Below are positions 13,357 to 60,885 of a DNA stretch of 64,000 nucleotides, in pieces (the stretch's first letter is position 1; every line of letters starts with the position of its first letter). The stretch comes from Perna viridis. Taxonomy: Eukaryota. The notes beneath the pieces were generated by a model. That model was not told the origin of the DNA, ran no database searches, and saw only the letters and a program-made list of their open reading frames with translations. The DNA lies in assembly GCA_037379345.1 (NCBI GenBank), contig CM074515.1, forward strand, positions 6,138,001 to 6,202,000. Direction: 5' to 3'. Position numbers and translations under genes: made by a program.

Positions 13357-14966
13357 ATTAAAGAAAAGTGGCTTTTATGATACAGTTTATTTTTAAAGAA
13401 AAAAAAACGGTCGCGAAACTTAAGCCCAATATAATCGATGCCATGATGGGCTCTAGTATTGTAAAGTGTAATTTATCTGAATGTGTGTTTACTTTGAAGT
13501 GCCCTACTAAGGAACATATGGGCTATATTTTTTTCTATTTTCCTATCTATCCCTGATTTTGCTAGTTATCTCTCTTCTCGATTCGATAATTTTAATATTA
13601 CCTTGATTTCGGACAGGATTCATTTCAAGAATTAGGAAATGGAGCTTCTCGTATTAAGGTACAATCATAGATCATACCTATTACACGGAGCATACTTATC
13701 TGTCATCTTGCAAATTCATTCAGACATATATTTTTTCTGTTAATTGATAGTGTTTGAAATGGTGTAAAAATAATATATTAGATTATCTCAAATGATTTTT
13801 TACATAAAAATTTTAAACATTTATTTTAAAGAGCCTCTTTTAAGGGGATATAATTGGTGGGAAATTTTCTTTCAAAGGGGAGATAATTGGCGGGAAATTT
13901 TCTATTAAAATGTATAGGGTATTTCAGTTTTTTAGCGTTGCAAGTAAAAGAGTTCGATGACCCCCAGTTTTCGTTTTGAAATATGAAAGAATTCCAGTTA
14001 AGTGTTCTTTACATAAAGTTATAAAGAATTTTAAAAGGCAGGGTTCTTTTTAAGACGGTTGCAAAATATTGAAAATTCCCTCTACATTAAAATTCTAAAG
14101 TATGTTCATTCAGGGTCATCTTTGAGAAAAACTAGGAAAATTTATCTACTAGAAATATTAGGTCTCATCTATCTTAAATCAGGTAGATATATATATCAAT
14201 CAGTCATACTCTGTGTCGTTATTACCTAAGATCAGTACTACGTTGACCTTTTTGTAGCATTGTCTGGCTTTCCGTGATAGAAGAGATGACCAAGTACATA
14301 TACTAATGACCAAAAGCAATTTCTATTTCGAAGCAAACAAAAATGTTTTTACTTTTTAAAGCCGCCCGGAGAATGAGGTTCGAAAAAAAAATCTCCTGGT
14401 GCAATGATAAAGAATCGATCCTTTATTCCAATGATTTTTAGAATTGCTTTTTCAGATGGTAAAACAATATACTAGACGCAAACATATAAAAATCATCATT
14501 ATATGTTATTCGTGATCTTAATAATAATGAAAACAAATATATTCTATATGTCGTTGGTTTCATCCCCTTCTAACAGCTGCAGACAGGCCTTTCGGAGTTC
14601 TCTGTCATTATTCAAGGGAATCGTCATTTGACAATCGGATAACCAAATATTGTAAGATTCTTGCATTTTCTGAGAGGGCTGGCTGCAGCGTCTAGAGTGA
14701 ATTTCAAACATCAGACCCTGTTTCGGAGCTTGACATGATGTAAGAAGACTGTTTTCAGATATTCTTATTAAAAAAGATGTTGAATTTCCACATTATTACT
14801 ATGGTTGTATACTTATTTTAACTTCACTTTCATGAAAGCAGTAGATTTCCTTATCCACTTCCATACCCCCGGGTCTACCACGGGAATATGAGACCATATC
14901 CCCTATCAAGCTGACCAATCAAATTGAATGATTACTCCATTAGAATGTATCAAAATCACCATATCA

Positions 14967-19183: not shown

Positions 19184-19599
19184 AAGAGCAACCAAGGGAA
19201 CCAAGATTATAGCGGTAATCAAAAGAATGCAATCCAGGGACAAAGACCAGACATGGAAAACAGACACAGACAACAAAGGACATACAGTAACTAAAATCAT
19301 ACATACAAAGTAACAAAAGTAAATGAGCAACTCGGACTCCACTAAAAACTGGGAGCATGGACCAGGTGCACCGGTAGGGTAAGCGTCCTCTGCTTTTCTA
19401 GAACCACCCGCCGAGTTGCTCATAAAAAGTCATGTCCGGGGAAGACAAACGAGAAAAGGAAAACTATGACCCGTTGAATACATCAGTTTTAATGGTGCTG
19501 ATGGATACATCATAACGATCCACAAGTTCATGATGACGACCATAAAACTTCTGTAGTGATGACTTCAATCTTGTAGCAACATAACCCTATTCCAGAAGC
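19184..19599 (-). mobile_element. Naiad-like Penelope-like element, 5'-truncated (RT C-terminus plus 3' UTR)
   Basis: Encodes GYVATRLKSSLQKFYGRHHELVDRY; near-identical to 49145-49540. Confidence 0.88.
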
Positions 19600-20614: not shown

Positions 20615-20930
20615 AAAGACCCATGGGTCTTCAATGAACGACGAGGAAACCCTCAAAACTGGTCCCAAAACAACATTATACACAAGCACAGCAAAATAGT
20701 TGCCTTTATATACTCCAGCAACAATAAAGTAAACTGGAAATAAAAACAAAACAAGACATACAGAGATCAGAAATTCCTGACTTAGGAAAAACGCAAAAAT
20801 GTGATGGAGTTAAAGTACTTTAGTGTGATCACAAGCCTTCCCTTTTTATAACTGGCCAATGTGGAAAAATATTACACATATAAACATACTACTACTAAGT
20901 TTAAAGAGGTCGGAATCCTTTGTTAAAACA
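20615..20930 (-). mobile_element. Interspersed repeat (twister-bearing family), decayed copy
   Basis: Reverse-complement alignment to 23110-23430 (shared TTCAATGAACGACGAGGAAACCCTCA, CAGAAATTCCTG, GTTAAAGTACTTT, GTGATCACAA). Confidence 0.85.
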
Positions 20931-23019
20931 TAAATTAAAAAAAAATATTATACGTTACCCACATGCACGAACGAAGGACGACTAGCAGATTCCAGTTCAC
21001 TAAGCTTGGAGCAAGTGCGAAGAAAGATAACCCTAATTCATTATATTGCATGCTTTTGTGTTTAGGTCTCAGTATCGTATTAATTTTCCCACAGACTTCT
21101 ATAGTGAAGTGCATATTTTTAGGATTTTTAAAAAAATATGTAATTTGATTCAATAAAACTTTCACTTATGTAGCATTTCTAAGGACATGTGAAAAATAAT
21201 TTTCCGCAAAGAAAATAGGGTGAGTCCACCAAGATCGGACAGAAAAGTAGCCTTGAACTATAAATAGCCATTTTCCGTACTTTCACTTTCGTTTTGCACT
21301 CATCAAACCAACCTTTTCAGTGGAACATTTTTATGTTATTATGATAGATTTTCTTTTTAAATAGTTCTTCATCTTACAGTGTGATGTTTGCTCTATTTTA
21401 TAAGTCATTGTTCATATCTTTTGACAAAACATTAGTTTGTAGAGAGGCAAAAAGAAAATGCACTATATTTTTCTAGCATCCATGTTTTGACGTACACCCG
21501 CTCAGGGATATGCAATACGATACTGGTACCTTAAGAGTTTATTATATAGTGCTAAAATGGTCCACGATACATGACTCGATTTCCTAGCTGGGATATTACA
21601 ACACATATTTTGTATTATATTGATATTATAACACATATTTTATATTGGCATTGATATTAATTGTACCTGTACTTTTTTATGTATGTATGTATATACGTTT
21701 CTTTGTTAATTGATGATAGATCAAGGTTTAGTCTTTATTTCAATAAAACTTACTTACTTAGTAAATATTTAAGCATTTTGGTCGCTAATATTGTTAGTGA
21801 CGTCTTGCACTGGTAATAACAGTACTGTGCATTAGTTTATGATTTGCATTATTGTATATTACTACACCACCTTAATCAGCAGATCGGTGCAGAAGAATCG
21901 TCAATTCTAGCTTCATCCAAGATCAAAATGTACCCCTTAAATACCATTCGTTTACATGTGTTCTATGTGTGTTTGTTTGTACTTGTTTTAGAGAGGGAAG
22001 TTTGCATTAAAAGATGACAAAGAACGGTTAGCATAGAACTTTCTGTTATATAGCTGTCCGAGTTGTTTTGATTGAGAAACTTCGGGTCATCACGGTTACG
22101 AAGTAACCCAATTTTAAATAGAGCATATCGTAATTTTGTTTGAGTTCGTACCATTTCGGACCCACTCGAAGTTAACCCGATTGACGAACTGTTGCGTTAC
22201 ACAACAAAGTTCAAAATTCAAAGTTTAATAGTAAAGTCGGTACATATAAAACATTACAACACAAACTTTAAAACGTTCTAAAATGTCAAGTATATTTTCG
22301 AAAAGGAATACACTTATTTTGCTAGTTAAATGTACAATGTCAAAAGATGTGAAATAGAAAAGAACATGAACGTATATTATCAATCGACCTAAAATCTTCA
22401 AATTTCAGCTCACTAAAATTTGTGATTTTTTTTAAATTTTGAACCAAATCCATACATATATCTACGCCAGGGTTTATGGTGAAAATGAGAAAATCACTGA
22501 TTGATTTGGAGTTAAGTTTAGTAGAGCATTGAATACGCATGGATGTTGCAAGCAAGCAAAAAATCAGTGGCATAGAATATTTGACGATTATCGACATTGA
22601 AGACTTCAGTCTTTGATTTATTTATCTCAAACTAAATTACATTTAAAAATAGAAGAACGTTATGAAGCCATCCTACCATCACCATCAATAATCATGATTT
22701 TTTACCGATTTGAATGTAATCATTTTTTCGCGATATAAGCTGGTTCTCGGCTGATTACTACATTACACTACATAGACTACAAGCGAGCAGTTTAATCGAG
22801 AAAGACTGGTTCCGATTGGTGAATAGAATACTCTAGGCAAACACGGAAACAGATACGTTCTTTTTATGGGTTAAAGTAGAGTAAATATTCATGATCTAGC
22901 CTAAAGGTAAAAAACGTAAACTTTTAATTTAAAACGTAAAAACCCATTTACTATGTATCATTCCGCTAGCGTACTGTACTTATTTACACACGATGGGGAC
23001 ATAACTCTTTGTATGTCTA

Positions 23020-23505
23020 AATTGGTCTTGAGCTGGCATGTCAGTTAACTGCTAGTAGTCCTTAGTTTGTACATTTGTGTAATTTATATTCAATTTCTTT
23101 ATTTCCGTTGTAACAAGGGACTTTGACCTTTCTGAACTGATTTTTAGGTGTGTTTAATTGTGTAATATTTGTTTCCACTGTGACCAGATTTTAAAAAGGG
23201 GAGGTTTGTGATCACGCCAAAGTACTTTAACCCCTCCGCATTTTTGCGCCTGTCCCAAGACAGGAATTTCTGGTCTTCGTATTCTTGTTTCGTTTTCACC
23301 TTTATTATTTTTTATGTTACTTGAGTATATAGTGGCAACTCTTTCGCTGTACTTGTGTATACTGATGGGGCCAGCGGCAGCCTGTCCTGTGGTATGAGGG
23401 TTTCCTCGTCGTTCATTGAACACCAATTTGTGGACTTGGGTTGACATTTTCATCCCGGTGGTGTTGTCTCTTTGACATATATACCATACCTTTTCTCGTT
23501 ATATC
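23020..23505 (+). mobile_element. Interspersed non-coding repeat (putative non-autonomous retroelement or solo pseudo-LTR) carrying a twister-like motif
   Basis: Second copy at 20615-20930; 3' end copies at 40555-40627 and 61071-61104; no ORF of note and no poly-A. Confidence 0.75.
23182..23275 (+). ncRNA. Candidate circularly permuted (P5-type) twister ribozyme
   Basis: P5 GACCAGA/TCTGGTC; P2 GGG/CCC; GAGG strand; U^AA cleavage motif 23228-23230; P3 CGCA-TTTT-TGCG; P4 CCT/AGG; L4 GTCCCAAGAC; T2 TC/GA. Confidence 0.65.
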
Positions 23506-23532
23506 ATTTGTTTAAAGGGGCGGGGTTCAGTA

Positions 23533-23597
23533 TTTAGGTTACAGACCACCAATTCAACCAATGAGCATTTGGAACGTACGCAAAAATAGTCCTACGC
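23533..23597 (+). repeat. Short dispersed repeat (second copy 56856-56917)
   Basis: TTTAGGTTACAGACCACCAATT..TTTGGAAC.TACGCAAAAA.AGTCCTACGC present at both sites. Confidence 0.75.
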
Positions 23598-25478
23598 AGA
23601 AATTACCCCTGTTCCTCATAGTGCTGTGAAAAAAGTTCTCATCTTATTTAAAAAATTCAAACAGTTTCTGAAAGGAAAAACATTTCTGTACATTTTATAG
23701 GTGCATTTTGCTTCTTGTGATGTGAAGCCTAATCTCCATAATGATTTTTAAATATACCCCTATCTTGTGAAAACACTGGGATTTCCCATGCTATTTATAG
23801 ACCCTTCACTTCCGGTGACCAGTACTGCACTGCAAGTCTGCTAACCCCACATGCCATTCTGAGGATTGTGAGCTGACATATGTAGAATCATGCTGATATA
23901 TAGTCATCTGCAGGTTAAAGTTAAGGTAAAGTCCAGAGAAGCCATTGAATATTGTGAAATTAGCATAGAAGCCTATGGGAAGTGGAATTAGTGGTTTTTA
24001 GCCTTTAGTGTGGCAGAGGGATATACCTTCTGTGTAGGAACACGAATATAAATCACTGATCACAAGATTTAAAATTTATGTTGAAAATAGCACTAAATTA
24101 TTGTGAAAATCGATATGATAAATAGGGTAATCGGTTTTCGTGAATAACAAAATATAATTACTAGTGCCAAGAACGCTTGGAGATTTAACTTGCATGTGGA
24201 ACAAATACCACTCACTCGTGAAATCCATGCGTTTTCCCGGGCATTCCTGGTCATGTTTTGGTTATTTTTTCTTTCCAATAAATTATCCCATTACTATTGA
24301 AAATTATTTCTTTCCATATCTTTTTTAACAACAGATCACTATATAATCACTATATTTGTTTCACCATTTTTCCAATCTCTTTACTACTTTTACTGGTTCT
24401 AAAGTTACTAAAGGAACCCAATGGATGCAATGATATGGAAACCCTCTGCCTCATTCTTAGATGAGCTTATACTTACAGGATTTAACTTTTCACAGTAGAC
24501 CTTTTCATCTAGTTTCTGATAATATTGTAACATGATATTGTGGCCCCTACACTGGTACAATGTGGGATATTTCACTCCCCTATAACAAAAATTTTTGAGA
24601 TAGTAAATTAAGGTCGACTATCATAGCAGTTCGTAGCGAGTTTTAGATTTGCATTATAATCCGAAGTATTTCTTCGCGGCATTTTTCTATTGGCAACTAA
24701 TTTTTTATGCCTAGAGAATACTTCGTGTTGACAAATATAAGATTCTACACCATATCATACATTTAAATCAGCCAGTAACCATGGAAACCAGTGTGTATGC
24801 AAGCATTTAAAAGTCACGCGGTTTTGAGTTGAATCTTTGTATGAAGAAGTTGCAATGTTTAGTTATATTTCAGCTTTTGGACTAACTTACTTACTTTCTT
24901 ATCCTTATTACAGTATACAGTTTGAAATGTGAAAATACATGTAAAAAATAACCTGTACTACTTCTATTACTACTACTCGAATTACATTTACAATATATTA
25001 ACTCAAAATCCTTGAAGTTCGCATTCAAATAACCATGCATGTGCCGAGTTATATTTGCAATGCCAAAGTTTTTACACCTTTGCTTAATCGGTGCTTAATC
25101 CTGCGTCTCTATGCAAATTGGTACAGTGCACTGGAAACAGCTTTGCATATATAATGAGTGTTCATGCCTTGTGAAAGTGGATATCAATAAGCTTGCAAAG
25201 TGATACATAGTAAATTAATAGGTGATTGGGCATTTGTCACGCCTTGTTAAAAGGCTTGATTGATAATGAACGTCTACTAACGTCTAAATAGAATAAATCA
25301 GGATCGTTCATAGAAGATTGATTCATTTGAATGAATAGCATTCAAACCCCCTCTATAAAAGATGACGCCATTTATTACCCAAAATACACAAGAACCCCAA
25401 CAAACAACGCTTAATAGTCGTATCAACAAATCCAAATCACTATCATCTATTCTAACAGATGCCACTTGAAAAGTTTTG

Positions 25479-25990: not shown

Positions 25991-27446
25991 GCAATTAAGT
26001 TTGATCATCATAGTAAAAGAATAAATAATGGAACGTAACTATCAATATGTATTTTTAAAAAATTGTTTTCCTTGATGTAGTCTTTCCCCGGGTTATGGAT
26101 ATCTTGTTCTTCGTTCTGTTCATGAAAAACAATATTTTTTAGGATTTTAGAATGTCACTTGTCTTGAGTTGAAAGTTCATACCAAGACCGTTCAATGGAG
26201 TATATTACAGGCTTAATATTTACTTAATAACAGTACAATTGTTGCTTTAGTTGAAAAGACAGAGTTCTGGACTAATCACATTTTGTAGTCATATTTTTTT
26301 TATTCGAAGATTAAAGTGGCGAAAACGCTACTGGGAAAATCGCAGGCTAATCGTTGGAAAAAATTACAATAATTGGAAACCTTGTCTGACGATGTTGTTT
26401 GTCAAACATCTTCATATATCTAATATCATGTAAAATTAAGCATTCAGCGATTTTATATGGCTTTCGAATCCAAAGGAGGGAAAGTTTTTTTCCAATCAAA
26501 CCTAAAGCGAAACCTGGAGGTTGGCGTTTGGTGTAATGCAGTATTAATTTCCTTACCATTTATTTCTTTTAAAAATATTTCAAAACTGTTTTTGAAATAA
26601 TTATTGCTACTGCAAAAGGTCAAATTATTTCTACTGAAAACAAATACTGATACCAAAATAAAATATTTTTGAAACAGTAAAATGTTTAATGAAAGACACC
26701 GATAAAACAGTATGGATTTTTTACTGGCAAAAAGCAACTATTTCTTTTCGACTAGTACTGCAATAGTTTTTGATGAATCACGTCAACGTTAATTACTGTT
26801 GGACATAATGGTATGTGTAACACGTGCACGAACTGTCAAATTTATTGTCTCATGTCAATTTAGTCAAATATTGCATCCATAATAAAAAATAACAATTTAC
26901 ATTTCAATCGCTGATAGCACTTATTGCATTCAAAAAAAATGTGCCAGATGAAAATATTCATTTCTTAAAAGATTAAAATAATCGGATGCGAAATATTTAA
27001 CAATAAAAAGTAACTGAAATTCCCCAAGGATACATATCTATGACAATCCTACATCATGATGTTTGATTAATGCACAATACAGGGTAAATAATCACTACAC
27101 ACAAACCCCTCATTTGCTCTACGATGTTGGTAGCTGAATTATTTATACGAAGTTGACAGATGACAGCACCGACGTTGATTTGATCGTCATCGATTACTTT
27201 AAATCTCTGAGAGGATTCGACGGAGTTCGTTCAATTTAATTTGCTCGATAATCTCTTTGGAAATGAGCTAAAAAATTTTGAATATATCTTGAATGTATTC
27301 TGAACTGCACTGGTAACGCTAATCATATAAAGAACAAGTTATTGTTTGTCTGGTTTTGGATTAAGTGTGTATTCGTAAGCTTATCTATTTTAAAAAGTTA
27401 GAAAAAGTCTATGATATATTGAACCTTAGCAGGAAAAAAACTTGAA

Positions 27447-28202
27447 ATGTTCAATATAACATGTAACGTGACAAATGAAACAGAAATGTGTGTATGTGTT
27501 GATGAATACGAGTATTATTCAGAATGTTACATCGTTCTTGCCGTATCTATCGTAGTTGTTATATTTGTTATGGGTTTTGTTGGAAATATTTTAGTCATTG
27601 TTGTCATAATTAAACGTAGGAGTATGCACACCACTACTAATTGTTACCTGCTCAGCCTAGCCTATGCTGACCTGCTGCTGCTGTTGTCCGCAGCGCTGCC
27701 GGCCACAGCAGATCCATTCTACAGGAGAGGAGAATGGCCGTATGGTTATGCTTTGTGCTCGCTAGTAGTATTCATTCAGTATTTCGGAGCTAACGCTTCT
27801 GCGCTTTCTATCACTGCATTCACAGTAGAAAGATACATAGCAATCTGTCATCCGATGAAGGCACAAATCATGTGCACAACTGAACGTGCAAAGAAGATTA
27901 TCGTGGGACTATGGTGCTTTGCGTTTATGTATTGTGGACCATGGCTAGGATTGAGTGAAGTACTTTGTAAAATAGATTTAAAGGGGAACAAAATGGAGCT
28001 ATGTGGCTACAGACTAGAGAGACACCAATACAGATTGTACTATGTGATAGATTTAGTGTTATTTTACATAATACCATTACTAATTACCGCTATTCTTTAC
28101 TCTTCTATAGTACACATGTTGTACAACACATCTATCTACTGCTCTCGCAGACAGAAATGTTTTGAAGAACGACGTCAAGCTACAGTGTCATCTAGAAGAC
28201 AG
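27447..28202 (+). CDS. TRHR: Thyrotropin-releasing hormone receptor-like GPCR, coding exon 1 (N-terminus to ICL3; TM1-5)
   Basis: GNILV, TNCYLLSLAYAD, QYFGANAS, ITAFTVERYIAICHPMKAQ..CT..RAKKII closely follow vertebrate TRHR; ends SSRRQ|GTAAG (phase 0 donor at 28203). Confidence 0.93.
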
Positions 28203-30019
28203 GTAAGTTCTAATATATTAAATGTTACTTGTGAAACATTTCTTTGGGTTTGCGGTTAAAAACTTCTATACTCACTAACTTGTTTCCTGATATTTACGTA
28301 ATGAATTGAATTTAGTTTACCTAAAAAAGAATAGTTCACCATTAGTTTTATTAATTGATACTTTCCTTACTGTTTTAAATAATTGAATTAAAATAAAACT
28401 TGGACTTCAGCAGCAATTGTTAAATAGAGAGGAACGAAGCAATCTTTTAACTTTGTTATAATTCTTATGATGCATATCACTTCTGCAAGTGAAAAATTTA
28501 TTCATCTTTTTTCACAGAAATTGGCATTATTTTACATTATAAGTTATTTCAATAGTTATGACTATGACAAAACCGTACAGTAATAAGACTAATGCCACGG
28601 GTGTTATGAGGATCGGTTTTTGAAATATGCATGGTTTTATCGACTTGGTTGTCCTTTTGTGTGGATTTTGTTATCTTGTAGCGAATTCGTTAAAATATCA
28701 AATGAAATATAATCGGTAATTGTTTCAGGTTTTCGTCAGTAAATTCGAAAGCGTTGTTGGTAGTGCCAATATCAGTTGTAACGACAGGCCAAAGGTTATT
28801 AAGGCCACGTGATACAATTAATTGTAGTTATCATGTCGTTTCTATTTTACACGGAAATATCAATAAAACATCAGCTTATACTAGAACTTTTTGGAGTGAT
28901 TTGCAGGTTGCGGTCTGCCAAGAGAACAAGTTTATTTTATTGAATTTAGCAAAAAAATAAATTAAAAAAAACAGCCTATATTCAACGTGCATGGCAAAGT
29001 AAAAACAAAATGGGATATGGATCAGGTACGCTGTAGGGGATGATTTTTCTTTCATTATTAGAATCATTCATCGAGTCGCACATGACCGGTAAAAATTTCC
29101 GAAAGTTAAATAAAATGTTGAATAGCTTGTTTTATTTTTATTAGAGACTGACACATCAAATTGTTCCACAAATCAGGATGTTTGCTCAGTAATAAAACTT
29201 CTATTTGTTAATACTACGCCGAGAGCATTAATGGTTTTATTATCAACTGGGTTCAATATACTTTTGGCCAAAAAAACATCAATATCCGGTTTGTGCATGT
29301 AAAATCGGGAGCTTAAAAATAGCATCATGGCAGCTTCATTCTCGAATATTTTGTAAATGCACTTGAGCACCACACCTTTCTAGGAAACATTAGCTAGCTT
29401 CGATGATTAAATGCAAATCGAATCTTAGCTTTTTCCCAGATAGGGGTGGTCAAAACATGGCACCCGAATGTTTACAAAAATAACTTTATCATGATCAGCT
29501 TATCAATAACCGAGACAATTAGATCCAAAGACATTTCGGACCATGCAGCCCACAGTTCCTTCCAAAGCCAGAAATTTTGACCCATACATATTTCAGACCA
29601 TGATAATAAGAGAATACATCAGGAAAAAAAACCGTATATCATAACAAATTTTATAATTTTAGAAGTAAATGAAAACAGGGCTGACAAAAATTACGAAAGA
29701 TGTTTCTTCGGGAGCGTTTACCTTCCTCATATTACCTTAAAATAATTTATCTATAAGATAATCTTAATTAGCTTCAGAAACATGCCAAAAGTGTTCGGTC
29801 ATTTGTAAATTTTCCCTTTGTTTCTATGCAAAATCGCATTTTTTTTTAAATTTGAAAGTTATTTCTAGATCCATTTTCATGATGTTTTACAAATTATAAG
29901 CGAAAGTTTTTGAAGTTTTGCTATTTATTTTGAAAAATGATTTTCTGGCTTAAAATGAATGACTATTGGCACTTTTATTACCGAGAGAACTGATGACGTT
30001 ACGATTTAACACTATTTTC

Positions 30020-33404: not shown

Positions 33405-34045
33405 GAGTAATCAAGGGAACCGAGATTCTAGCCGAAGTCAAAAGAATGTAATCCAGGGACAAACACCAGACATAGAAAAGAGACACATACGACAAAGAAC
33501 ATAAAATAACAAAAAAAATACATACAAAGTAACACAAGTAAAAGAGCAACTCGGACTTCACTGGGAGCATGGACCAGGTGCACCGGTAGGGTAAGCGTCC
33601 TCTGTTTTTCTAGAAACACCCACCGTGTTGCTCATAAAAGGTTAAGTTCATGGTAGACGAAAGAGGAAAGGAAAACTATGACACATTGTACAAATAGGTT
33701 TTCATGGTGCAAATGTATACACCGTAACAATCCAAGAGTTCATTATTACGACCATAAAACTTCTGTATTGATGACTTCAATCTTGTAGCAACATAAACCT
33801 GTTCCATAAGCCTAATTGGAAGTACTCTAGAGCGACACAAAAAGTCTGCATGGTTACGGCAAGCTCTGGCATAACGCATGAGTTGTGATATGTAAACTCC
33901 CATACGCAGGTGCTGAAGGAATGCTGTCACATATGAAAGGAAAGTTGACAATACGGAATGAAAAGTCGTCGCGTATGTCGTATAATTTGGTCAATCGTTT
34001 TCCTTTACACTCGACTTCAAAGTGTAGATCAAGATAGGAGGTGAC
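33405..34045 (-). mobile_element. Naiad-like Penelope-like element, 5'-truncated (RT thumb plus 3' UTR)
   Basis: GVYISQLMRYARACRNHADFL..ATRLKSSIQKFYGR; same 3' terminus as the other copies. Confidence 0.88.
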
Positions 34046-35005
34046 AGATTGAGTACCAGAATATGTTAGGATACGTAAAGTCTAAGTAACAAACAATCTA
34101 TCTGAAAACTTTTGAAACTAGTAGACAAAATGTTGAAAAAAGCCAGAAAACAAACATCAAAGAATGGAAACCAAAGAACCAAGAAAACACAACAGAAAAT
34201 TCAATGAAAAATCGCACGGAGGGTCTTGCTGAGAACAGACATTCACTTGTCAACCCAATCGCTTTCACAAAATCTCTCAAAAAATATCAACCTTAAAAGT
34301 TTCGGTCCTCCTTTTCTGTATACAGTGGTGTAAAAGCTCTAAAGATACAGAATAAATTTTGAACCATCAGTATATCTATGCGTGGAAAGAGTAATCATGG
34401 AAACCAAGGTTCGAGTTGAAATCAATAGAAATATTCCTAGAACAAAAACAAGACAGGGAAAACAGACACACACAGCAAAGAGCATAGAACAACCGTAATA
34501 TGGAACATATGTTATGCATTACAATACAATTTAACCGTTGGGAATATTAAAGATTTTTATTTAATAAACATAAACGGCCAAAAGTCATGAGGACAATAAT
34601 TACGACCGATTGAAGGATACCTCATAAGTAACTTTACAGTCCTTATTGCAAGCTATAAACCCTCTAGTCAAAGATGCAGCTTCGAACTTTTTGCCATATC
34701 AAATTACAGTACACTTTCACATGAACTATATTTCTGTTATGGAAAACTATACTATTCATTAGCATCGACTTTATAATGATCTCAAAATAATAGTACATTT
34801 GCTATAAATAATCAATGTTTTGCTAATAATTAATGAAATAAAATTGCATTCCTTTGACATTTCATTACAATGATACATCCGTTTCTCTTAATGACATTTC
34901 AAATCCATAAAGTCCTAAAAGATATCCCATGTTTATGCATTTATAGGTCATTTTTGGTAAACTCCGAGATTTTATTAAATTTGTTCGAAAATGCCCTATG
35001 CACAC

Positions 35006-40554: not shown

Positions 40555-40627
40555 CGTGCTGACATTTTCATCTCGGTGGGGTTGATGTCTCTTTGATATA
40601 TCCTCCATACCTACTCTCGTTATATTC
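40555..40627 (+). mobile_element. 3' terminal fragment of the twister-bearing repeat family
   Basis: TGACATTTTCATC.CGGTGG..TTG.TGTCTCTTTGA.ATAT..CCATACCT..TCTCGTTATAT matches 23442-23504. Confidence 0.75.
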
Positions 40628-43798: not shown

Positions 43799-44190
43799 AA
43801 GAGTAATCAAGGGAACCAATGTTATAGTGGTAATCAAAAGAATGTAATCCAGGGACAAAGACCAGACATGGAAAACAGACACACACAACAAAGAACATAA
43901 AGTAATTAAAATCATACATACAAAGTAACAAAAGCAAATAAGCAACTCGGACTCCACTAAAAACTGGGAGCATGGACCAGGTGCACCGGTTGGGTAAACG
44001 TCCTCTGCTTTTTTAGAAACACCCGCCAAGTTGCTAATAAGAAGTCAAGTCCGGGTAGACAAACGAGGAAAGGAAAACTATGAACCGTCGAATAAATCAG
44101 TTTTCATGGTGCAGATAGATATACCATAACTATCCACGAGTTCATGATGACGACCATAAAACTTCCGTTGTGATGACTTCAATCTTGTAG
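43799..44190 (-). mobile_element. Naiad-like element, 5'-truncated
   Basis: Near-identical to 19184-19577 and 49145-49525. Confidence 0.88.
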
Positions 44191-45366
44191 TAAAGGTAGA
44201 TCATTTTCTTATACTTTCAGTAGACAGGTTTTTCCTATTAATTCTCAAAGATTATCCCTTGAACGAACATACTGCAAAATTTTAAGATAAAAAAATATAA
44301 GTCACCGAACTTAATTTCGAGATAATTGAGTCTATATACAGTCTATATAAATATATATATTTTTACAACATTTTATGTATTTCCCAGTTTCGTTTTTTGT
44401 ATTATGAATACCTATCTGACATTATTTCTTTTTTTTAAAAAAGAAAATAGGGGTCATCGATTTTTTACTTGTATTATCAAAACAAAAAACAAACAAAAAA
44501 ACAACTAAAATTCCCATTATGTTATGATACATTATTTTCCCCTCAATCATCTCCCCCCCTTGAAAGAGGTTTTGTAAAACCAATGTTTGTAGTTTTGCCA
44601 TATATAGGTTTGTGCCAAACTATCTTTTTGAATAATTTTAAGGACAATTGTTTTCCATCTTTTCAAACACTATTTGCTCATTGAAAATACATACTTTTGT
44701 ATAATTTTGCAAATTGACAGAAAAGGATGCGCCGTGTAAAAGTTTGATCCACTTTAAAGATAAAGAACTCAATTGTATTAAAATATTGATAACACAAATT
44801 CTCGGAAACCAATTTCCAGTGAAAGATTGAGAGAAATAAAGAGTGGTGTGTTATACAAGATAAGGAAACAGCTAAAAATGGTTGAATTAAATAATAGCTG
44901 TCTCCTAAAAATAGAAATAGCATATGTGGCCATGGAGTGTTTCCGTTAAAATTAAGCGTTTTAAAAAAGAAAACAGAAACACGAAACAGATGAGATATTA
45001 AAAAAGTAATTTCCTTGAGGAATTACCTTTTGACCAAATATGTGTCATTTTCTATTATGGGAATTTCTAATATAACGTCTTCATATCGTCAAATAGTATA
45101 TGTCGGTACAACCCCACCTTTACCACCTGCGCACTATCTCTTTTCTTTCATTGTCGCTTCGAGACAAGGCTCATTTAAAAACGTTCACACGATGACTTAA
45201 CGGCTAAGATGTTATCTAATTGAAATCCATTATATAAATACACACATTTAACACATACGATGACATAAATATACAAATTTAATCAAACTGCTGTACGGGG
45301 GAGGTTAAACGGAACAGCCGTTATTTCGGCTATTCCTAGGGAAATTTTTGTCAAAAAAAGAAAAAG

Positions 45367-49144: not shown

Positions 49145-50535
49145 GAATCAAGGTTATAGGGTAATCAAAAGAATGTAATCCAGGGACAAAGACCAGACAT
49201 GGAAAACAGAAACACACAACAAAGAACATAAAGTAACTAAAATCATGCATACAAAGTAATAAAAAGCAAATGAGCAACTCAGACTCCACTAAAAACTGGG
49301 CGCTTGGACCAGGTGCACAGGTAGGGTAAGCGTCATTTGCTTTTCTAGAAACACCCGCCGAGTTGCTCATAAAAAGTCAAGTCCGCGGTAGACAAACGAG
49401 GAGAGGAAAACTATGAACCGTTGAATAAATCAGTTTTCATGGTGCAGATGGATACACCATAACGATCCATGAGTTCATGATGACGACCATAAAACTTCTG
49501 TAGTGATGACTTCAATGTTGTAGCAACATTACCCTGTTCCAAAAGCTTATTTGTTAGAGTTCTAGCGCGATACAAAAATACTGCGTAGTTTCGGCAAGCT
49601 CTGGCATAACGTATGAGTTGTGATATGAACACTCCATACGCAGGTGCCGAAGGAATGTTGCCACAGATGAAAGGAAAGTTGATAATTCTGAATGGAAAGT
49701 CATCACGTTTGTCGTAAAGTTTGGTCAATAGTTTTCCTTTACCATCGATTTCTATGTGTAGGTCAAGATATGAGGCTGACTTCACAGTGCCTGTAGTATC
49801 CTTTATCTCAAGTTCTTTTGGGTAGATGCGATGTATCGAATTCCCGAAATTAGGATTGTTTAAAGATAATACGTCATCTATATAGCGGAAACTGATTGTA
49901 ATTTTACCCGGTACCTTAGTTTCTTTTTTCAATATTTCAGACGGGTCAAACAGCTTACTATTATCATCACTGTCAGTATCAGAATTAGACGAGTCCTGTG
50001 AGGAAGACTCTGACTCTGATATTCCACCCTCTTCATGGTCAATTTTTCTCTTTCTACCGGAAATTTGGGAAGTAGGAACTGGTTCTTCTCCAACATTTGT
50101 TTCCGAAACCCAGTAAAGGAGCACAATTTGTTCCCATTGGAATGCCATGCCAACCGTTTGTTGAAAAACACGTCCACCACACTGGACAAATATGTTGTCG
50201 ATTAAAAATTCCAGCATTTTGTAAACATTTTCCTCTGTATATTTGGAAGATGATTTGGAATTATTTCTTACAAAGTATGAGAAACCTCTACCAAGAACTA
50301 TATATTGGAAAAAAACAACGATGTATAATGTTTTTAAGTCGGAATTTTAACTGAGTATGGAGAATAGAAGTATACAGTGTTGGAAAATTATAGGTTTTAA
50401 CGCTATTATATTCATATAATAGTCTTGAACTGATTGTCTCCAAAAGATCTTTCGAACTTTGCAGGATCCACATTGAATTAATACCACTACTGGTGTAACA
50501 AGTGTTGTAGTAGGACTGCAGACTAGTATCTCTAC
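49145..50535 (-). mobile_element. Longest Naiad-like Penelope-like element copy: disrupted RT with a DIRS-derived insert
   Basis: RT motifs KTYNFPTLYTSI, QQTVGIPMGTNCAPLL (after removing a GGCAT duplication), FRYIDD, SASYLDL, LYDKRDDF, GVFISQLIRYAR. The ORF ends after the thumb with no C-terminal GIY-YIG, as in N-terminal-EN PLEs. Confidence 0.85.
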
Positions 50536-59744: not shown

Positions 59745-60885
59745 CAGGTTAGGTTTATTAGACAGGCCAACTTTCCCTTCATTTGTATCAATATGTTTCA
59801 GCACGTTCGTAAAGAGGTTCCATATCAATCCATATCAAAACTCATAGGTTATGTGAAAGATTGGCGAAACTGCACAGACTTTTTGTACTTTGCTATACTT
59901 CTGGTTTTCACCCAGACGGCCCGGGTTCGATTCCCGGCATCGGAGCTTAAATTTTTGCTTCGTGCAGGTCCGGGTGTTAAAAGAATAGGCCTGCAACAGC
60001 GCTAAGCTTGTTGTAAAAAGCGACTAAATAATGCTCAGAACCCTAGCCAGGGACTAGAGCGCTCTGCCCACAAAGCAACTGGAATGTGTGCCCCAGGTGG
60101 TGGAATGGGGTACCCCAGGCGTGTTACAGGTTGTCAGGCTATAATACGGAAAACCTGACTGCAAACCATAGTGGTGCACCGTGTTGGAAAGATGCCACGT
60201 TCCTCGCACGTTAAAGAACCCTGCTGTGGTATTCTCCCGGAGTAGGAACCATAGGGCTCCGCCACAGGAGGCTAAATTGCCCGACCCTACCCATCTCTCC
60301 CTATTTCCAGTGGCAATCAAAATTTGTCGACCCCATTGTCCTTGTGTCCCATCCCTTTTTTATTTCATCATCATTTCATGTTCATTTTATCATCAATTTC
60401 ATGTTCATCGTCTGAATATAGCTGAAATATTGCTGCTCGGACGTTAAACCCCAACAAACAAACAAACAAACAAACAATACAATTTTGCTCCTGGACAGGG
60501 CTATGTTGCTACTGGAGAAATGCTATTTACAAAAGTGTTATGGTCATCATAATGAACTCGCGGGTCTAATAATGTATCCATCTGCACAATGTGAACCGAT
60601 TTGTTCACCGTGTTATAGTTTTCTTTTCCTCTTTCCTCTTAACCGGACCTTAAATTTTAAGAGCAGCTCGGCGGGTGTTCCTTGAAAATCAGAAGACGCC
60701 AACCTTACCCGTGCATAGGTCAATGTTCCCAGTTTTAGTTGGTTGAGTCTGGGTTGTTCATTTTGTTTTTGTTTTTGTTTTTATTCTGATTATTTCATGT
60801 TTTGTTGTGTGTGTCTACTATCTAGTTTTGATCCTTGGTATATATTCTTTGGACTTCCGCTCCAATCTTGCTTAAATTGATTTCT
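59745..60885 (+). mobile_element. Old Naiad-like fragment interrupted by a SINE
   Basis: NFPFIC-like and CRNCTDFLY-like sequence before 59900 resumes at ~60478 (QGYVAT, YGHHNEL), followed by the family 3' UTR. Confidence 0.7.
59899..60477 (+). mobile_element. tRNA-Glu(TTC)-derived SINE (5'-clipped), Meta-domain-like core, (CAAA)n tail
   Basis: CTGGTTTTCACCCAGACGGCCCGGGTTCGATTCCCGGCATCGGA matches the 3' two-thirds of tRNA-Glu with the B box. GCACGTTAAAGAACCC core motif (recalled as MetaSINE-like); LINE-like tail ATATAGCTGAAATATTGCTG..CGTTAAACCCCAA plus (CAAA)n. Confidence 0.85.

What the first reader, a model, noticed from the sequence alone, without database searches (positions are those of the whole stretch)
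23182..23275. Circularly permuted (P5-type) twister ribozyme embedded in an animal interspersed repeat
Seen: most twister core elements are present, in permuted order, with three deviations listed below. The order is P5 5' GACCAGA (23182-88); P2 3' strand GGG (23198-200); G-A-G-G (23201-04, general-base G plus T1 strand); a hairpin in the P1 position; U^AA (predicted cut 23228/23229); P2 5' CCC; T2 strand TC (23235-36); P3 CGCA-UUUU-UGCG; P4 CCU; L4 GUCCCAAGAC; AGG; P5 3' UCUGGUC (23269-75, 7 perfect pairs). Against the Oryza sativa twister (UAAC..GCC..GCCGGUCCCAAGCCCGG..GGAGGG), the T2 pseudoknot G-C pair becomes a compensatory U-A pair. Deviations: P1 is non-canonical (bulged, U-U), one T1 G is U, and the fourth P2 position is a C-A mismatch, so this copy may be slow or dead. 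Known: twister occurs as P1/P3/P5 permutations and P1 is dispensable. As I recall, eukaryotic retroelement-linked twisters (e.g. Schistosoma RTE) are P1-type. Inference: the host repeat has a defined non-poly-A 3' end and internal ribozyme placement, like hammerheads in Penelope pseudo-LTRs and retrozymes. It may be a twister-based retrozyme or the pseudo-LTR of a hammerhead-less PLE.
Basis: partly seen in the sequence, partly recalled or inferred. Interest (0 to 1): 0.88.

Follow-up and report, generated by a model that had tools for sequence, protein, structure and literature searches.

The report
Decayed twister ribozyme of Naiad retroelement
This stretch is a worn, 5'-truncated copy of a Penelope-like (Naiad-type) jumping gene whose tail carries a circularly permuted twister-type self-cutting RNA. 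Related elements from other animals keep the same fold through compensating mutations, which matters because Naiads were thought to have no ribozyme.

Summary
Window 22983-23504 (+) is a 5'-truncated, roughly 15% diverged copy of an abundant repeat (more than 3000 BLAST candidates). Longer copies carry, directly upstream, the decayed C-terminal end of a Penelope-like reverse transcriptase.

The family majority sequence fits the twister core better than this copy does.

The same ~100-nt motif lies 270-300 nt after the stop codon of intact Naiad-type ORFs on six unrelated public contigs. These ORFs have an N-terminal GIY-YIG-like region, a C-terminal RT, in-frame UGA codons and a SECIS. Across seven lineages, 86 of 91 core cells pair. 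Eight of 13 pairs, including pairs in both pseudoknots (T1 and T2), change on both sides. P3 and P5 differ completely in sequence but stay paired.

P1 is replaced everywhere by two palindromes that change sequence yet stay self-complementary. The second palindrome ends at the cut site.

Rfam twister models do not score the motif, though they score two control twisters. Cleavage is untested, and this copy is probably dead. The scan had already noted this motif elsewhere in this genome. I found no paper linking twister to Naiads.

The parts
22983..23504 (+). 5'-truncated copy (3' UTR part only) of a Naiad-like Penelope-like retroelement family. The 3' end is defined (...CUCGUUAUAU) and has no poly-A.
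   Evidence: BLAST of the window against 30 family loci: homology runs from 22983 to 23503/4, the 3' ends are shared and the 5' ends vary. Longer copies extend upstream into a decayed RT end.
23177..23280 (+). The whole twister-like motif including the outer part of P5. Family covariance model R1 scores it 114.9 bits.
23182..23188 (+). P5 5' strand GACCAGA. The family majority is GGCCAGA; the G>A here is matched by C>U at 23274.
23197..23200 (+). P2 3' strand AGGG. The family majority is GGGG, so the outer pair is an A x C mismatch in this copy.
23201..23205 (+). L1 strand GAGGU (family majority GAGGG). The first G is the candidate general base. Letters 3-5 form pseudoknot T1 with CCC 23254-56, and the last of those pairs is lost in this copy.
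   Evidence: review PMC5408937 for the roles
23208..23215 (+). Palindrome 1, GUGAUCAC, in the place of the P1 3' strand.
   Evidence: In the other lineages it has a different sequence but is always palindromic.
23219..23228 (+). Palindrome 2, AAAGUACUUU, in the place of the P1 5' strand. Its last U is the nucleotide 5' of the predicted cut.
23228..23230 (+). U^AA. The predicted scissile bond lies between 23228 and 23229.
   Evidence: Position equivalent to U-A-A of the Rfam-confirmed Twister-P5 controls. AA is invariant in all lineages.
23231..23236 (+). P2 5' strand CCCC, followed by the T2 strand UC (family majority GC).
23237..23248 (+). P3 hairpin, CGCA-UUUU-UGCG.
   Evidence: P3 has a different sequence but stays paired in every lineage.
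23249..23264 (+). P4 with loop L4: CCUG / U CCC AA GA / CAGG. CCC pairs in T1 and GA pairs in T2.
23269..23275 (+). P5 3' strand UCUGGUC.
20623..20988 (-). Second, more decayed copy of the same family. Its motif lies at 20760-20862 (-) and scores 83.7 bits with R1.
40560..40625 (+). Short fragment matching only the last ~65 nt of the family's 3' end.

Best explanation
Window 22983-23504 is an old, 5'-truncated insertion of a Naiad-type Penelope-like retroelement. These elements have a GIY-YIG endonuclease at the N-terminus and a reverse transcriptase at the C-terminus.

The element's 3' UTR serves as the pseudo-LTR when units lie in tandem. It encodes a ~100-nt RNA with the twister ribozyme fold in type-P5 topology:
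- P5 is open and P3 is closed by a loop.
- P2 and P4 are joined by the two pseudoknots T1 and T2.
- The U^AA cut site faces the GA of loop L1.

The canonical P1 hairpin is replaced by two palindromes, and the second one ends at the cut site.

Inferred mechanism: in the active ancestor the RNA cut itself between U and AA (23228/23229 here). This trims transcripts that start in an upstream pseudo-LTR copy and end in the 3' UTR to unit length. The palindromes most likely pair two ribozyme copies with each other, as the minimal hammerheads of other Penelope-like elements do.

What is shown: the fold, its conservation and its location.
What is inferred: catalysis, dimer dependence and the processing role.

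The window copy itself has lost one P2 pair and one T1 pair and is probably inactive.
For: 1. The sequence is as described.
2. The family majority has all core letters: GGGG-GAGGG ... U^AA-CCCC-GC ... CCUG-U-CCC-AA-GU-CAGG.
3. Two metagenome RNAs with the same order and core score 52.9 and 50.7 bits on Rfam Twister-P5, whose gathering score is 37.6.
4. Longer family copies encode a decayed RT end in the same orientation. It is PLE-like and 47-50% identical to P0066 and P0101.
5. Contigs carrying P0101, P0066, P0153, P0185, P0174 and P0164 have the motif 270-300 nt after the stop. Model R1 gives its top hit at exactly those places, at 14.7-40.2 bits.
6. Those ORFs are colinear with P0063, which has a weak Pfam GIY-YIG hit near the N-terminus and the RT at the C-terminus. 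They are interrupted only by in-frame TGA and are followed by SECIS hits.
7. Covariation over seven lineages: 86 of 91 core cells pair, against 67 in shuffles (0 of 5000 shuffles reach the observed value). Eight of 13 pairs change on both sides. T1 pair 1 is G-C, A-U, U-A or G.U; across those seven lineages T2 pair 1 is A-U or C-G (G.U in the family majority, U-A in the window copy).
8. Both palindromes differ between lineages by symmetric double changes.
9. L206 shows head-to-tail units of about 3.99 kb with the motif about 390 nt before the next ORF.
Against: - No Rfam twister model matches the window copy, better family copies or the other lineages at E <= 10.
- No cis P1 hairpin is present.
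- P2 pair 2 is mismatched in two lineages with intact ORFs (L206, L210), and T1 pair 3 is U x U in two lineages.
- Within the family, pairs vary no more than shuffles do, as expected for neutral decay, so the family alone gives no support.
- There is no evidence of cleavage. Only assembled contigs of probable RNA runs were available, and several of them bridge 23228/9.
- The lineages fall into about three clades, so independent compensatory events number roughly 9-10, not 8 x 7.
- N-terminal GIY-YIG was not seen for the window's own family, because only truncated copies were in hand.
Confidence: 0.7

Rival explanations
1. The RNA has the twister fold by descent but no longer cuts. Under this reading it serves as a structured 3' UTR module that the element's own RT/EN recognises, or as an RNA dimerisation signal through its two palindromes, for example to allow the template switching that produces tandem and inverted PLE insertions.
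For: - The palindromes are the most striking conserved feature and are not needed for twister chemistry.
- P1 is missing.
- Some lineages with intact ORFs carry mismatches in P2 and T1.
- Rfam models fail on the motif.
- Another abundant Naiad-like family in this genome has a palindrome but no twister core after its stop codon.
Against: - The letters needed only for catalysis are invariant in all lineages: the A after the cut, and the GA of L1 including the candidate general-base G.
- L4 keeps U...AA-G in six of the seven lineages; the decayed L204 copy reads CA there.
- A purely structural role would not need the U^AA / GA juxtaposition.
- All other EN+ PLE clades carry a self-cleaving ribozyme at this same place (PMC8557442).
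Confidence: 0.2
2. The repeat is a non-autonomous twister 'retrozyme' or SINE-like element, unrelated in origin to an autonomous retroelement.
For: - Most copies are short and non-coding.
- Three copies seemed to share a 5' end about 1.29 kb from the 3' end.
- There is no poly-A tail.
Against: - Copies continue upstream into a decayed RT reading frame in the same orientation, beyond that apparent 5' end (L032, L012/L035, L042).
- The 5' ends are scattered, as with 5' truncation.
- Copies are dispersed rather than arranged in tandem arrays.
- Intact relatives are autonomous Naiads.
Confidence: 0.06
3. The match is a chance look-alike of the twister consensus in AT-rich repeat DNA.
For: - Rfam gives no hit.
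- A loose descriptor finds about one hit per 0.7 Mb of shuffled sequence.
Against: - The family majority fits the core better than this copy does.
- The motif recurs at the same position in six other lineages with compensatory changes in every helix and in both pseudoknots.
- By my estimate the strict core is expected about 0.02 times per genome.
Confidence: 0.02

Closest known systems
Type-P5 twister ribozyme (Rfam RF02684, clan CL00120; Roth et al. 2014, recalled from my own knowledge; review PMC5408937)
   Same: - The order of elements is the same: P5, A-rich joiner, P2 3' strand, GAGGG-type L1, P1 region, U^AA, P2 5' strand, a two-letter T2 strand, optional P3, then P4 with a U-NNN-AA-G-N loop, then P5.
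- P2 has four pairs and P4 is closed by a G-C pair.
- T1 (3 pairs) and T2 (2 pairs) are supported by covariation.
- The layout is identical to controls L150 and L101, which Rfam scores above threshold.
   Different: - The P1 hairpin is replaced by two palindromes of 6-10 nt.
- The T1 and T2 letters vary (A-U, U-A, C-G, G.U) instead of the usual GGG/CCC and GC/GC.
- P3 and P5 are long.
- The motif scores below E = 10 on all Rfam twister models.
- The host is an animal retroelement rather than a bacterial or phage locus.
- Activity is untested.
Minimal hammerhead ribozymes in the pseudo-LTRs of Penelope-like elements, which cleave as dimers (Lunse et al. 2016, cited in PMC6765202; Cervera & de la Pena 2014)
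   Same: - Both are self-cleaving-type RNAs in the 3' UTR / pseudo-LTR of an EN+ PLE.
- In both, the helix next to the cut site is reduced and replaced by self-complementary sequence, which suggests that two copies must pair.
- Tandem unit arrangement is seen in a relative.
   Different: - The ribozyme class is different: twister, not hammerhead.
- There are two separate palindromes rather than one palindromic loop.
- Dimer dependence here is only an inference.
Naiad clade of PLEs (Craig et al. 2021, PMC8557442)
   Same: - RT at the C-terminus and a GIY-YIG-like region near the N-terminus in relatives.
- Multiple in-frame UGA codons plus a SECIS, i.e. the selenoprotein-coding Naiads reported from clams.
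- Heavy 5' truncation, partial tandems and very high copy number in a probable mollusc.
- No canonical hammerhead.
   Different: The paper reports that Naiads lack canonical ribozyme motifs and discusses their success without one. Here at least one Naiad sub-lineage carries a twister-fold RNA at the place where other PLEs have the hammerhead. One full-length Naiad contig (L080) and another family in this genome show no such motif, so it is not universal.
Twister variants at the 5' end of Perere-3 / RTE non-LTR retrotransposons of Schistosoma mansoni (PMC8501958)
   Same: A twister-derived RNA carried by an animal retrotransposon and proposed to process its transcript.
   Different: Those variants are type-P1-like and truncated. 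They sit at the 5' end of a LINE, and their P1 is completed by the target-site duplication. The motif here is a full double-pseudoknot type-P5 form in the 3' UTR of a PLE.

Membership tests
Twister ribozyme, type P5 | Circular permutation with termini in P5, the P1 side continuous and P3 optional and closed | tested here: met
   The order of elements in the window and in all lineages equals that of the Rfam-confirmed Twister-P5 controls L150 and L101.
Twister ribozyme, type P5 | Helices P2 (4 bp) and P4 (3 bp plus a closing G-C pair), supported by covariation | tested here: met
   P2 pairs 2 and 4 and P4 pairs 1-3 change on both sides across seven lineages. The closing G-C pair is invariant. 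In the window copy one P2 pair is lost.
Twister ribozyme, type P5 | Two pseudoknots: T1 (L1 with L4) and T2 (two letters after P2 with two letters of L4) | tested here: met
   T1 pair 1 is G-C, A-U, U-A or G.U. T2 pair 1 is G.U, A-U, U-A or C-G. T2 pair 2 is always C-G. T1 pair 3 is U x U in two lineages.
Twister ribozyme, type P5 | Conserved active-site letters: N^A-A at the cut, G-A at the start of L1, U...A-A-G in L4 | tested here: met
   Invariant in the family majority and in six lineages. Only the decayed L204 copy has CA in place of AA.
Twister ribozyme, type P5 | P1 helix next to the cut site | tested here: not met
   No cis hairpin is present; there are two palindromes instead. At best a weak 3-4 bp cis pairing is possible. 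The review notes that P1 of env22 has only two Watson-Crick pairs, and P1 dispensability is known to me from the mini-twister work, recalled rather than checked.
Twister ribozyme, type P5 | Score at or above Rfam's gathering threshold | tested here: not met
   There is no twister hit at E <= 10 on 131 nt, on 2.5 kb, on 10 other family copies or on 6 other lineages. The best RF02684 hit in the genome scores 22 bits and lies elsewhere. That model has 58 positions, with no P3 and a short P1 hairpin.
Twister ribozyme, type P5 | Site-specific self-cleavage giving 2',3'-cyclic phosphate and 5'-OH ends | not testable with these tools
   Only Logan contigs were available and no raw RNA reads, so RNA ends cannot be seen.
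Naiad-type Penelope-like element | PLE-type RT at the C-terminus with no C-terminal endonuclease | tested here: met
   The decayed RT end sits upstream of the motif in family copies. The related ORF L032:3319-4032 is colinear with a canonical PLE RT and ends without an EN domain. Full-length relatives carry the matching region at their C-terminus.
Naiad-type Penelope-like element | N-terminal GIY-YIG endonuclease | tested here: inconclusive
   P0063 has a Pfam GIY-YIG hit at residues 118-203 with E = 0.0013, below the curated cut-off. The motif-bearing ORFs of L210 and L205 align to P0063 residues 130-548 and 555-970 but give no Pfam hit of their own. The window's own family was seen only as truncated copies.
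Naiad-type Penelope-like element | 5' truncation, defined 3' end, partial tandems (pseudo-LTR), bias for (TA)n insertion sites | tested here: met
   The 5' ends are scattered and the 3' end is shared. Head-to-tail units are seen in relative L206, and adjacent same-strand partial copies in L004 and L007. A (TA)n flank was seen at only one copy, L035, so that sub-feature is inconclusive.
Retrozyme (non-autonomous, tandem, ribozyme-bearing) | Non-coding units without RT-derived sequence, in tandem, each carrying a ribozyme | tested here: not met
   Copies run upstream into RT remnants and are dispersed.

The most novel reading that the evidence does not exclude
A large sub-lineage of Naiad Penelope-like elements, the clade reported to have no ribozyme, uses a permuted twister ribozyme whose P1 is replaced by two palindromes. 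Under this reading it is active only when two copies pair, either the two pseudo-LTR copies on one transcript or two separate RNAs. Paired cleavage would release unit-length RNA with 5'-OH and cyclic-phosphate ends that can be circularised and copied. PLEs would then have recruited two unrelated ribozyme classes for the same job, with the same dimer logic.
Probability: 0.35. Interest if true: 0.85.

Novelty: new variant of a known kind. Interest (0 to 1): 0.75.

Why it matters
Every endonuclease-bearing Penelope-like clade except Naiad/Chlamys carries a hammerhead ribozyme in its pseudo-LTR. The lack of one in Naiads has been taken to mean that the ribozyme is dispensable, or merely parasitic on the element (PMC8557442).

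A twister-fold RNA at the same position would change that reading in several ways:
- It would point to convergent recruitment of two ribozyme classes, and so to self-cleavage being part of the PLE life cycle.
- It would add tens of thousands of animal twister copies that current Rfam models miss.
- It would give a natural twister without P1, in which palindromes may impose dimer-dependent activity. That is directly testable in vitro.

For genome annotation, it explains one abundant mollusc-type repeat as a set of Naiad tails.

Tried and rejected
- **Rfam cmscan.** I ran it at permissive thresholds on the window, on family copies and on the other lineages. No twister hit appeared, and RF02684 over the whole genome found only a 22-bit hit elsewhere. 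I do not take this as evidence against the fold, because the model has 58 positions with no P3 and a hairpin P1.
- **Within-family covariation.** It is no better than shuffles. Dispersed copies decay neutrally, so the test is uninformative.
- **Per-column conservation along the family.** The motif is 90-95% conserved against 82-87% in the flanks. I rejected this as evidence because the copies had been chosen by their match to the motif.
- **Family model R1 on the whole genome.** It returned only the same family, 150 hits of 95-133 bits.
- **Strict core regex over all held DNA.** No other family turned up.
- **Further DNA from this genome.** I therefore could not fetch intact copies, other twister-bearing families of this genome, or an unbiased sample of 5' ends. 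The one by-catch truncated copy starts inside L4, not at the cut site.
- **Sequencing runs.** Only assembled contigs were served. No RNA ends can be read, and several contigs bridge the cut site.
- **Metagenome pattern scan.** Of 120 stretches, only 2 passed the pairing filter. Both are ordinary Twister-P5 and none is Naiad-like.
- **Contig of full-length Naiad P0063 (L080).** No motif lies in the 930 nt after its stop.
- **Contig look-ups.** Three look-ups gave no DNA because the sample file was too large, and two contigs ended before the expected position.
- **RNAcofold.** Dimers of the motif are favoured by 11-18 kcal/mol through the palindromes, but one control twister also gains 14 kcal/mol, so the test does not discriminate.
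- **MAFFT and CM alignments of the lineages.** Some rows were a letter out of register. I therefore counted pairs from an anchored regular-expression parse in a script rather than with the count of structure pairs.

Majority letters were used only to measure divergence and to describe the ~100-nt motif.

Full report
**Observation**

- GACCAGA 23182-88 pairs with UCUGGUC 23269-75.
- AGGG-GAGGU lies at 23197-23205.
- U^AA lies at 23228-30.
- CCCC-UC lies at 23231-36.
- A CGCA/UGCG hairpin lies at 23237-48.
- CCUG-U-CCC-AA-GA-CAGG lies at 23249-64.

A plain energy fold gives P5, P2, P3 and P4, at -32.3 kcal/mol with z = -2.9. Rfam finds no twister at E <= 10 on 131 nt or on 2.5 kb, and nothing reaches a gathering score anywhere in the window.

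**The repeat**

A 161-nt query finds more than 3000 candidates in the 723-Mb assembly, and the 40 that were scored are 84-89% identical. Homology to the window runs from 22983 to 23503/4. The 3' end (...CUCGUUAUAY) is shared, while the 5' ends are scattered. Other copies extend about 1.3-1.5 kb upstream of that 3' end. The window also holds a second, older copy at 20623-20988 (-) and a 3'-terminal scrap at 40560-40625.

The majority sequence of 32 copies reads, in short blocks:
- GGCCAGA / UUUUAAA / GGGG / GAGGG / UU / GUGAUCAC / GCCAA / AGUACU / U
- U^AA / CCCC / GC
- P3
- CCUG-U-CCC-AA-GU-CAGG / AAUU / UCUGGCC

The P2 A x C mismatch and the lost third G of T1 in the window copy are therefore private mutations. 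Its U-A pair in T2 replaces a G.U pair of the majority, and 6 of 32 copies have A-U there. Contigs of other copies laid on the window read G at 23235 and T at 23260.

Among 66 loci only three distinct copies keep every core letter. Reading frames are broken in all 150 best protein matches. The family is old and inactive.

**Host element**

The 5' part of longer copies encodes a decayed RT C-terminal region in the same orientation as the motif. L042 frame 2 shows this clearly.

A related intact fragment, L032:3319-4032 (-), aligns colinearly with a canonical PLE RT from motif B through the thumb. That canonical RT is the L073 ORF, which has a C-terminal GIY-YIG. The L032 fragment ends without an endonuclease domain.

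Searching 1.8 billion representative proteins gave 19,926 relatives, and in the long ones the match lies at the C-terminus. P0063 (996 aa) has a weak Pfam GIY-YIG hit at residues 118-203. This is the Naiad architecture of Craig et al. 2021. That paper states that Naiads lack canonical hammerheads, are heavily 5'-truncated, form pseudo-LTRs and dominate bivalve genomes (PMC8557442). A host protein from one locus is nearest to mollusc proteins, which is a lead only.

**Other lineages**

The family's RT remnant is closest (47-50% identity) to P0066 and P0101. I looked at contigs carrying these proteins and their relatives P0153, P0185, P0174 and P0164, all from unrelated ENA metagenome assemblies. 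Every contig that extends far enough shows the same motif 270-300 nt after the stop codon.

Model R1, built only from the window's family, puts its best hit in each contig exactly there:

| Contig | R1 score (bits) |
|---|---|
| L204 | 40.2 |
| L213 | 25.1 |
| L203 | 22.3 |
| L201 | 21.5 |
| L206 | 15.8 |
| L210 | 14.7 |

The ORFs of L210 and L205 are open for about 1080 codons apart from three or four in-frame TGA codons, and they align to P0063 along its length. Rfam SECIS_1 hits lie directly after the stops: 36.4 bits in L203, above the gathering score, and 26-29 bits in the others. These are the selenoprotein-coding Naiads described from clams.

In L206 the 3' UTR runs on into the 5' region of a next unit, with a period of about 3.99 kb. 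The motif therefore lies about 390 nt before the next ORF, in the pseudo-LTR position.

**Covariation**

I parsed each lineage by an anchored pattern and counted 13 core pairs: P2 (4), T1 (3), T2 (2) and P4 (4).
- Over seven lineages, 86 of 91 cells are standard pairs. Shuffles average 67, and 0 of 5000 reach the observed value.
- Eight pairs change on both sides; 0.3% of shuffles reach this.

| Element | States seen |
|---|---|
| P2 | GGGG/CCCC, GUGG/CCAC, GAGU/ACUC |
| T1 pair 1 | G-C, A-U, U-A, G.U |
| T2 pair 1 | A-U or C-G among the seven lineages; G.U in the family majority, U-A in the window copy |
| P4 | CCUG/CAGG, CACG/CGUG, GCCG/CGGC, ACCG/CGGU |

P3 (4 to 9 bp) and P5 (6-8 bp, often with a second outer helix) share no sequence between clades but are always paired. 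AA after the cut and GA at the start of L1 are invariant in all seven lineages. The U...AA-G of L4 holds in six of them; the decayed L204 copy reads CA in place of AA.

The lineages form about three clades. I therefore count roughly nine or ten independent compensatory events.

Exceptions:
- U x C and A x C at P2 pair 2 in L206 and L210.
- U x U at T1 pair 3 in L203 and L206.
- C x U at P4 pair 2 in L201.

**Comparison with real twisters**

A pattern scan of metagenome contigs for the permuted core gave 120 stretches. Only two also had P2 and P4 pairing. Rfam scores both as Twister-P5, at 52.9 and 50.7 bits against a gathering score of 37.6.

They have the same order and the same fixed letters as the Naiad motif, but a normal P1 hairpin and GC/GC in T2. 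The Naiad motifs get no Rfam twister hit in the same run. The model's 58 positions, with no P3 and a short P1, and the variable T1/T2 letters explain this. The failure is recorded as an unmet membership criterion.

**The P1 region**

In every lineage the strand between L1 and the cut holds two palindromes.

| Position | Variants seen |
|---|---|
| Palindrome 1 | GUGAUCAC, GGCGCGCC, GGCGCC, CAGUGCACUG, GGUGCACC, GGGCGCCC |
| Palindrome 2 | AAAGUACUUU, AACCGGUU, UCCGGA, AAACUGGUUU (self-pairs with G.U), AAGCCGGCUU |

The differences are symmetric double changes, so self-complementarity is what is kept. The G.U case argues for pairing at the RNA level. The second palindrome ends at the cut site or one letter before it.

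An 8-10 nt palindrome cannot fold on itself, so pairing between two copies is the simplest reading. This parallels the dimeric minimal hammerheads of other PLEs (cited in PMC6765202). It remains an inference for two reasons. A weak 3-4 bp cis P1 is possible in each lineage. And RNAcofold does not separate the motifs from one control.

**What could not be done**

I therefore have no unbiased sample of copy 5' ends and no intact copies from this genome.
- Only assembled contigs of probable RNA runs were served. They show that family sequence is present and that several contigs bridge 23228/9, but they cannot show RNA ends.

**Literature**

No paper in the library holds both 'Naiad' and 'twister'. 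Recent retrozyme, PLE and ribozyme papers do not mention such a motif. Known twister-retroelement links are the truncated 5' variants of RTE/Perere-3 (PMC8501958; PMC7761336). Roth et al. 2014 is not in the library, so I cannot exclude that some of these loci appear in its lists.

**Earlier notes of this scan**

Notes on other windows of the same genome had already reported a permuted twister-like or pseudoknotted palindromic RNA in Naiad tails. I used them as leads for the Naiad link and for the palindromes. I tested both independently here with contigs from outside this genome.

**Verdict**

- The twister and PLE interpretation is supported.
- The window copy is a dead relic.
- The class is a new structural and biological variant of a known ribozyme, and catalysis is still to be shown.

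Noticed in passing
L201:1700-1765, L203:1093-1155, L204:3231-3297, L206:1656-1718, L210:3266-3328: Rfam SECIS_1 hits lie directly after the stop codons of the motif-bearing Naiad ORFs. L203 scores 36.4 bits, above the gathering score, and the others 26-29 bits. The ORFs are interrupted only by 3-4 in-frame TGA codons, so these are selenoprotein-coding Naiads.
   Followed up: partly
window 49348-49935 (-), 33613-34078 (-), 19401-19598 (-), 44021-44191 (-), 60574-60678 (+); L032:3319-4032 (-): Several copies of a second abundant Naiad-like RT family (motif PMGTNCAPLLADLFL...FRYIDDVL). Its short 3' UTR shows no twister core, but it has a palindrome GGUGCACC about 40 nt after the stop.
   Followed up: partly
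window 61727-64000 (-): A 758-aa open frame running off the window end, with Pfam DUF4371 and a hAT C-terminal dimerisation region: a hAT-type transposase or a domesticated relative.
   Followed up: no
window 27423-28256 (+): A 278-aa open frame with a strong rhodopsin-family 7TM receptor match (E = 2e-41). It is probably a single-exon GPCR gene.
   Followed up: no
window 23500-24100 and 21100-21500: Other repeats flanking the element have very high summed contig depth in probable RNA runs of the species, 10-50 times that of the Naiad copy. These repeat families are highly represented or expressed and were not identified.
   Followed up: no
L037:3329-4771 (-): A host gene for a leukocyte-receptor-cluster-member-9-like protein with RWD, MJ1316 (RNA cyclic-end recognition) and AKAP7 2'-5' RNA-ligase-like domains. 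Its nearest protein cluster is mostly from Mollusca.
   Followed up: partly
L101:3213-8325 and 14326-14404 (-): This metagenome contig holds eight tRNA genes and a bona fide Twister-P5 (50.7 bits), so it looks phage-like. It was used here only as a positive control.
   Followed up: no
L201:1985-2106, L204:3517-3641, L213:3521-3637: In the GUGG/CCAC clade a second, outer 7-8 bp helix (for example UAAGACC with GGUCUUA) encloses P5 across an internal loop. The structured module is therefore about 120 nt long.
   Followed up: no
L004 (element orientation) 1929-2040; L007 557-992 and 1210-1846: Partial second copies of the family lie on the same strand within 80-220 nt of a first copy. In L004 the second copy is just the ribozyme region. 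This could be a pseudo-LTR-like arrangement or a nested insertion.
   Followed up: no
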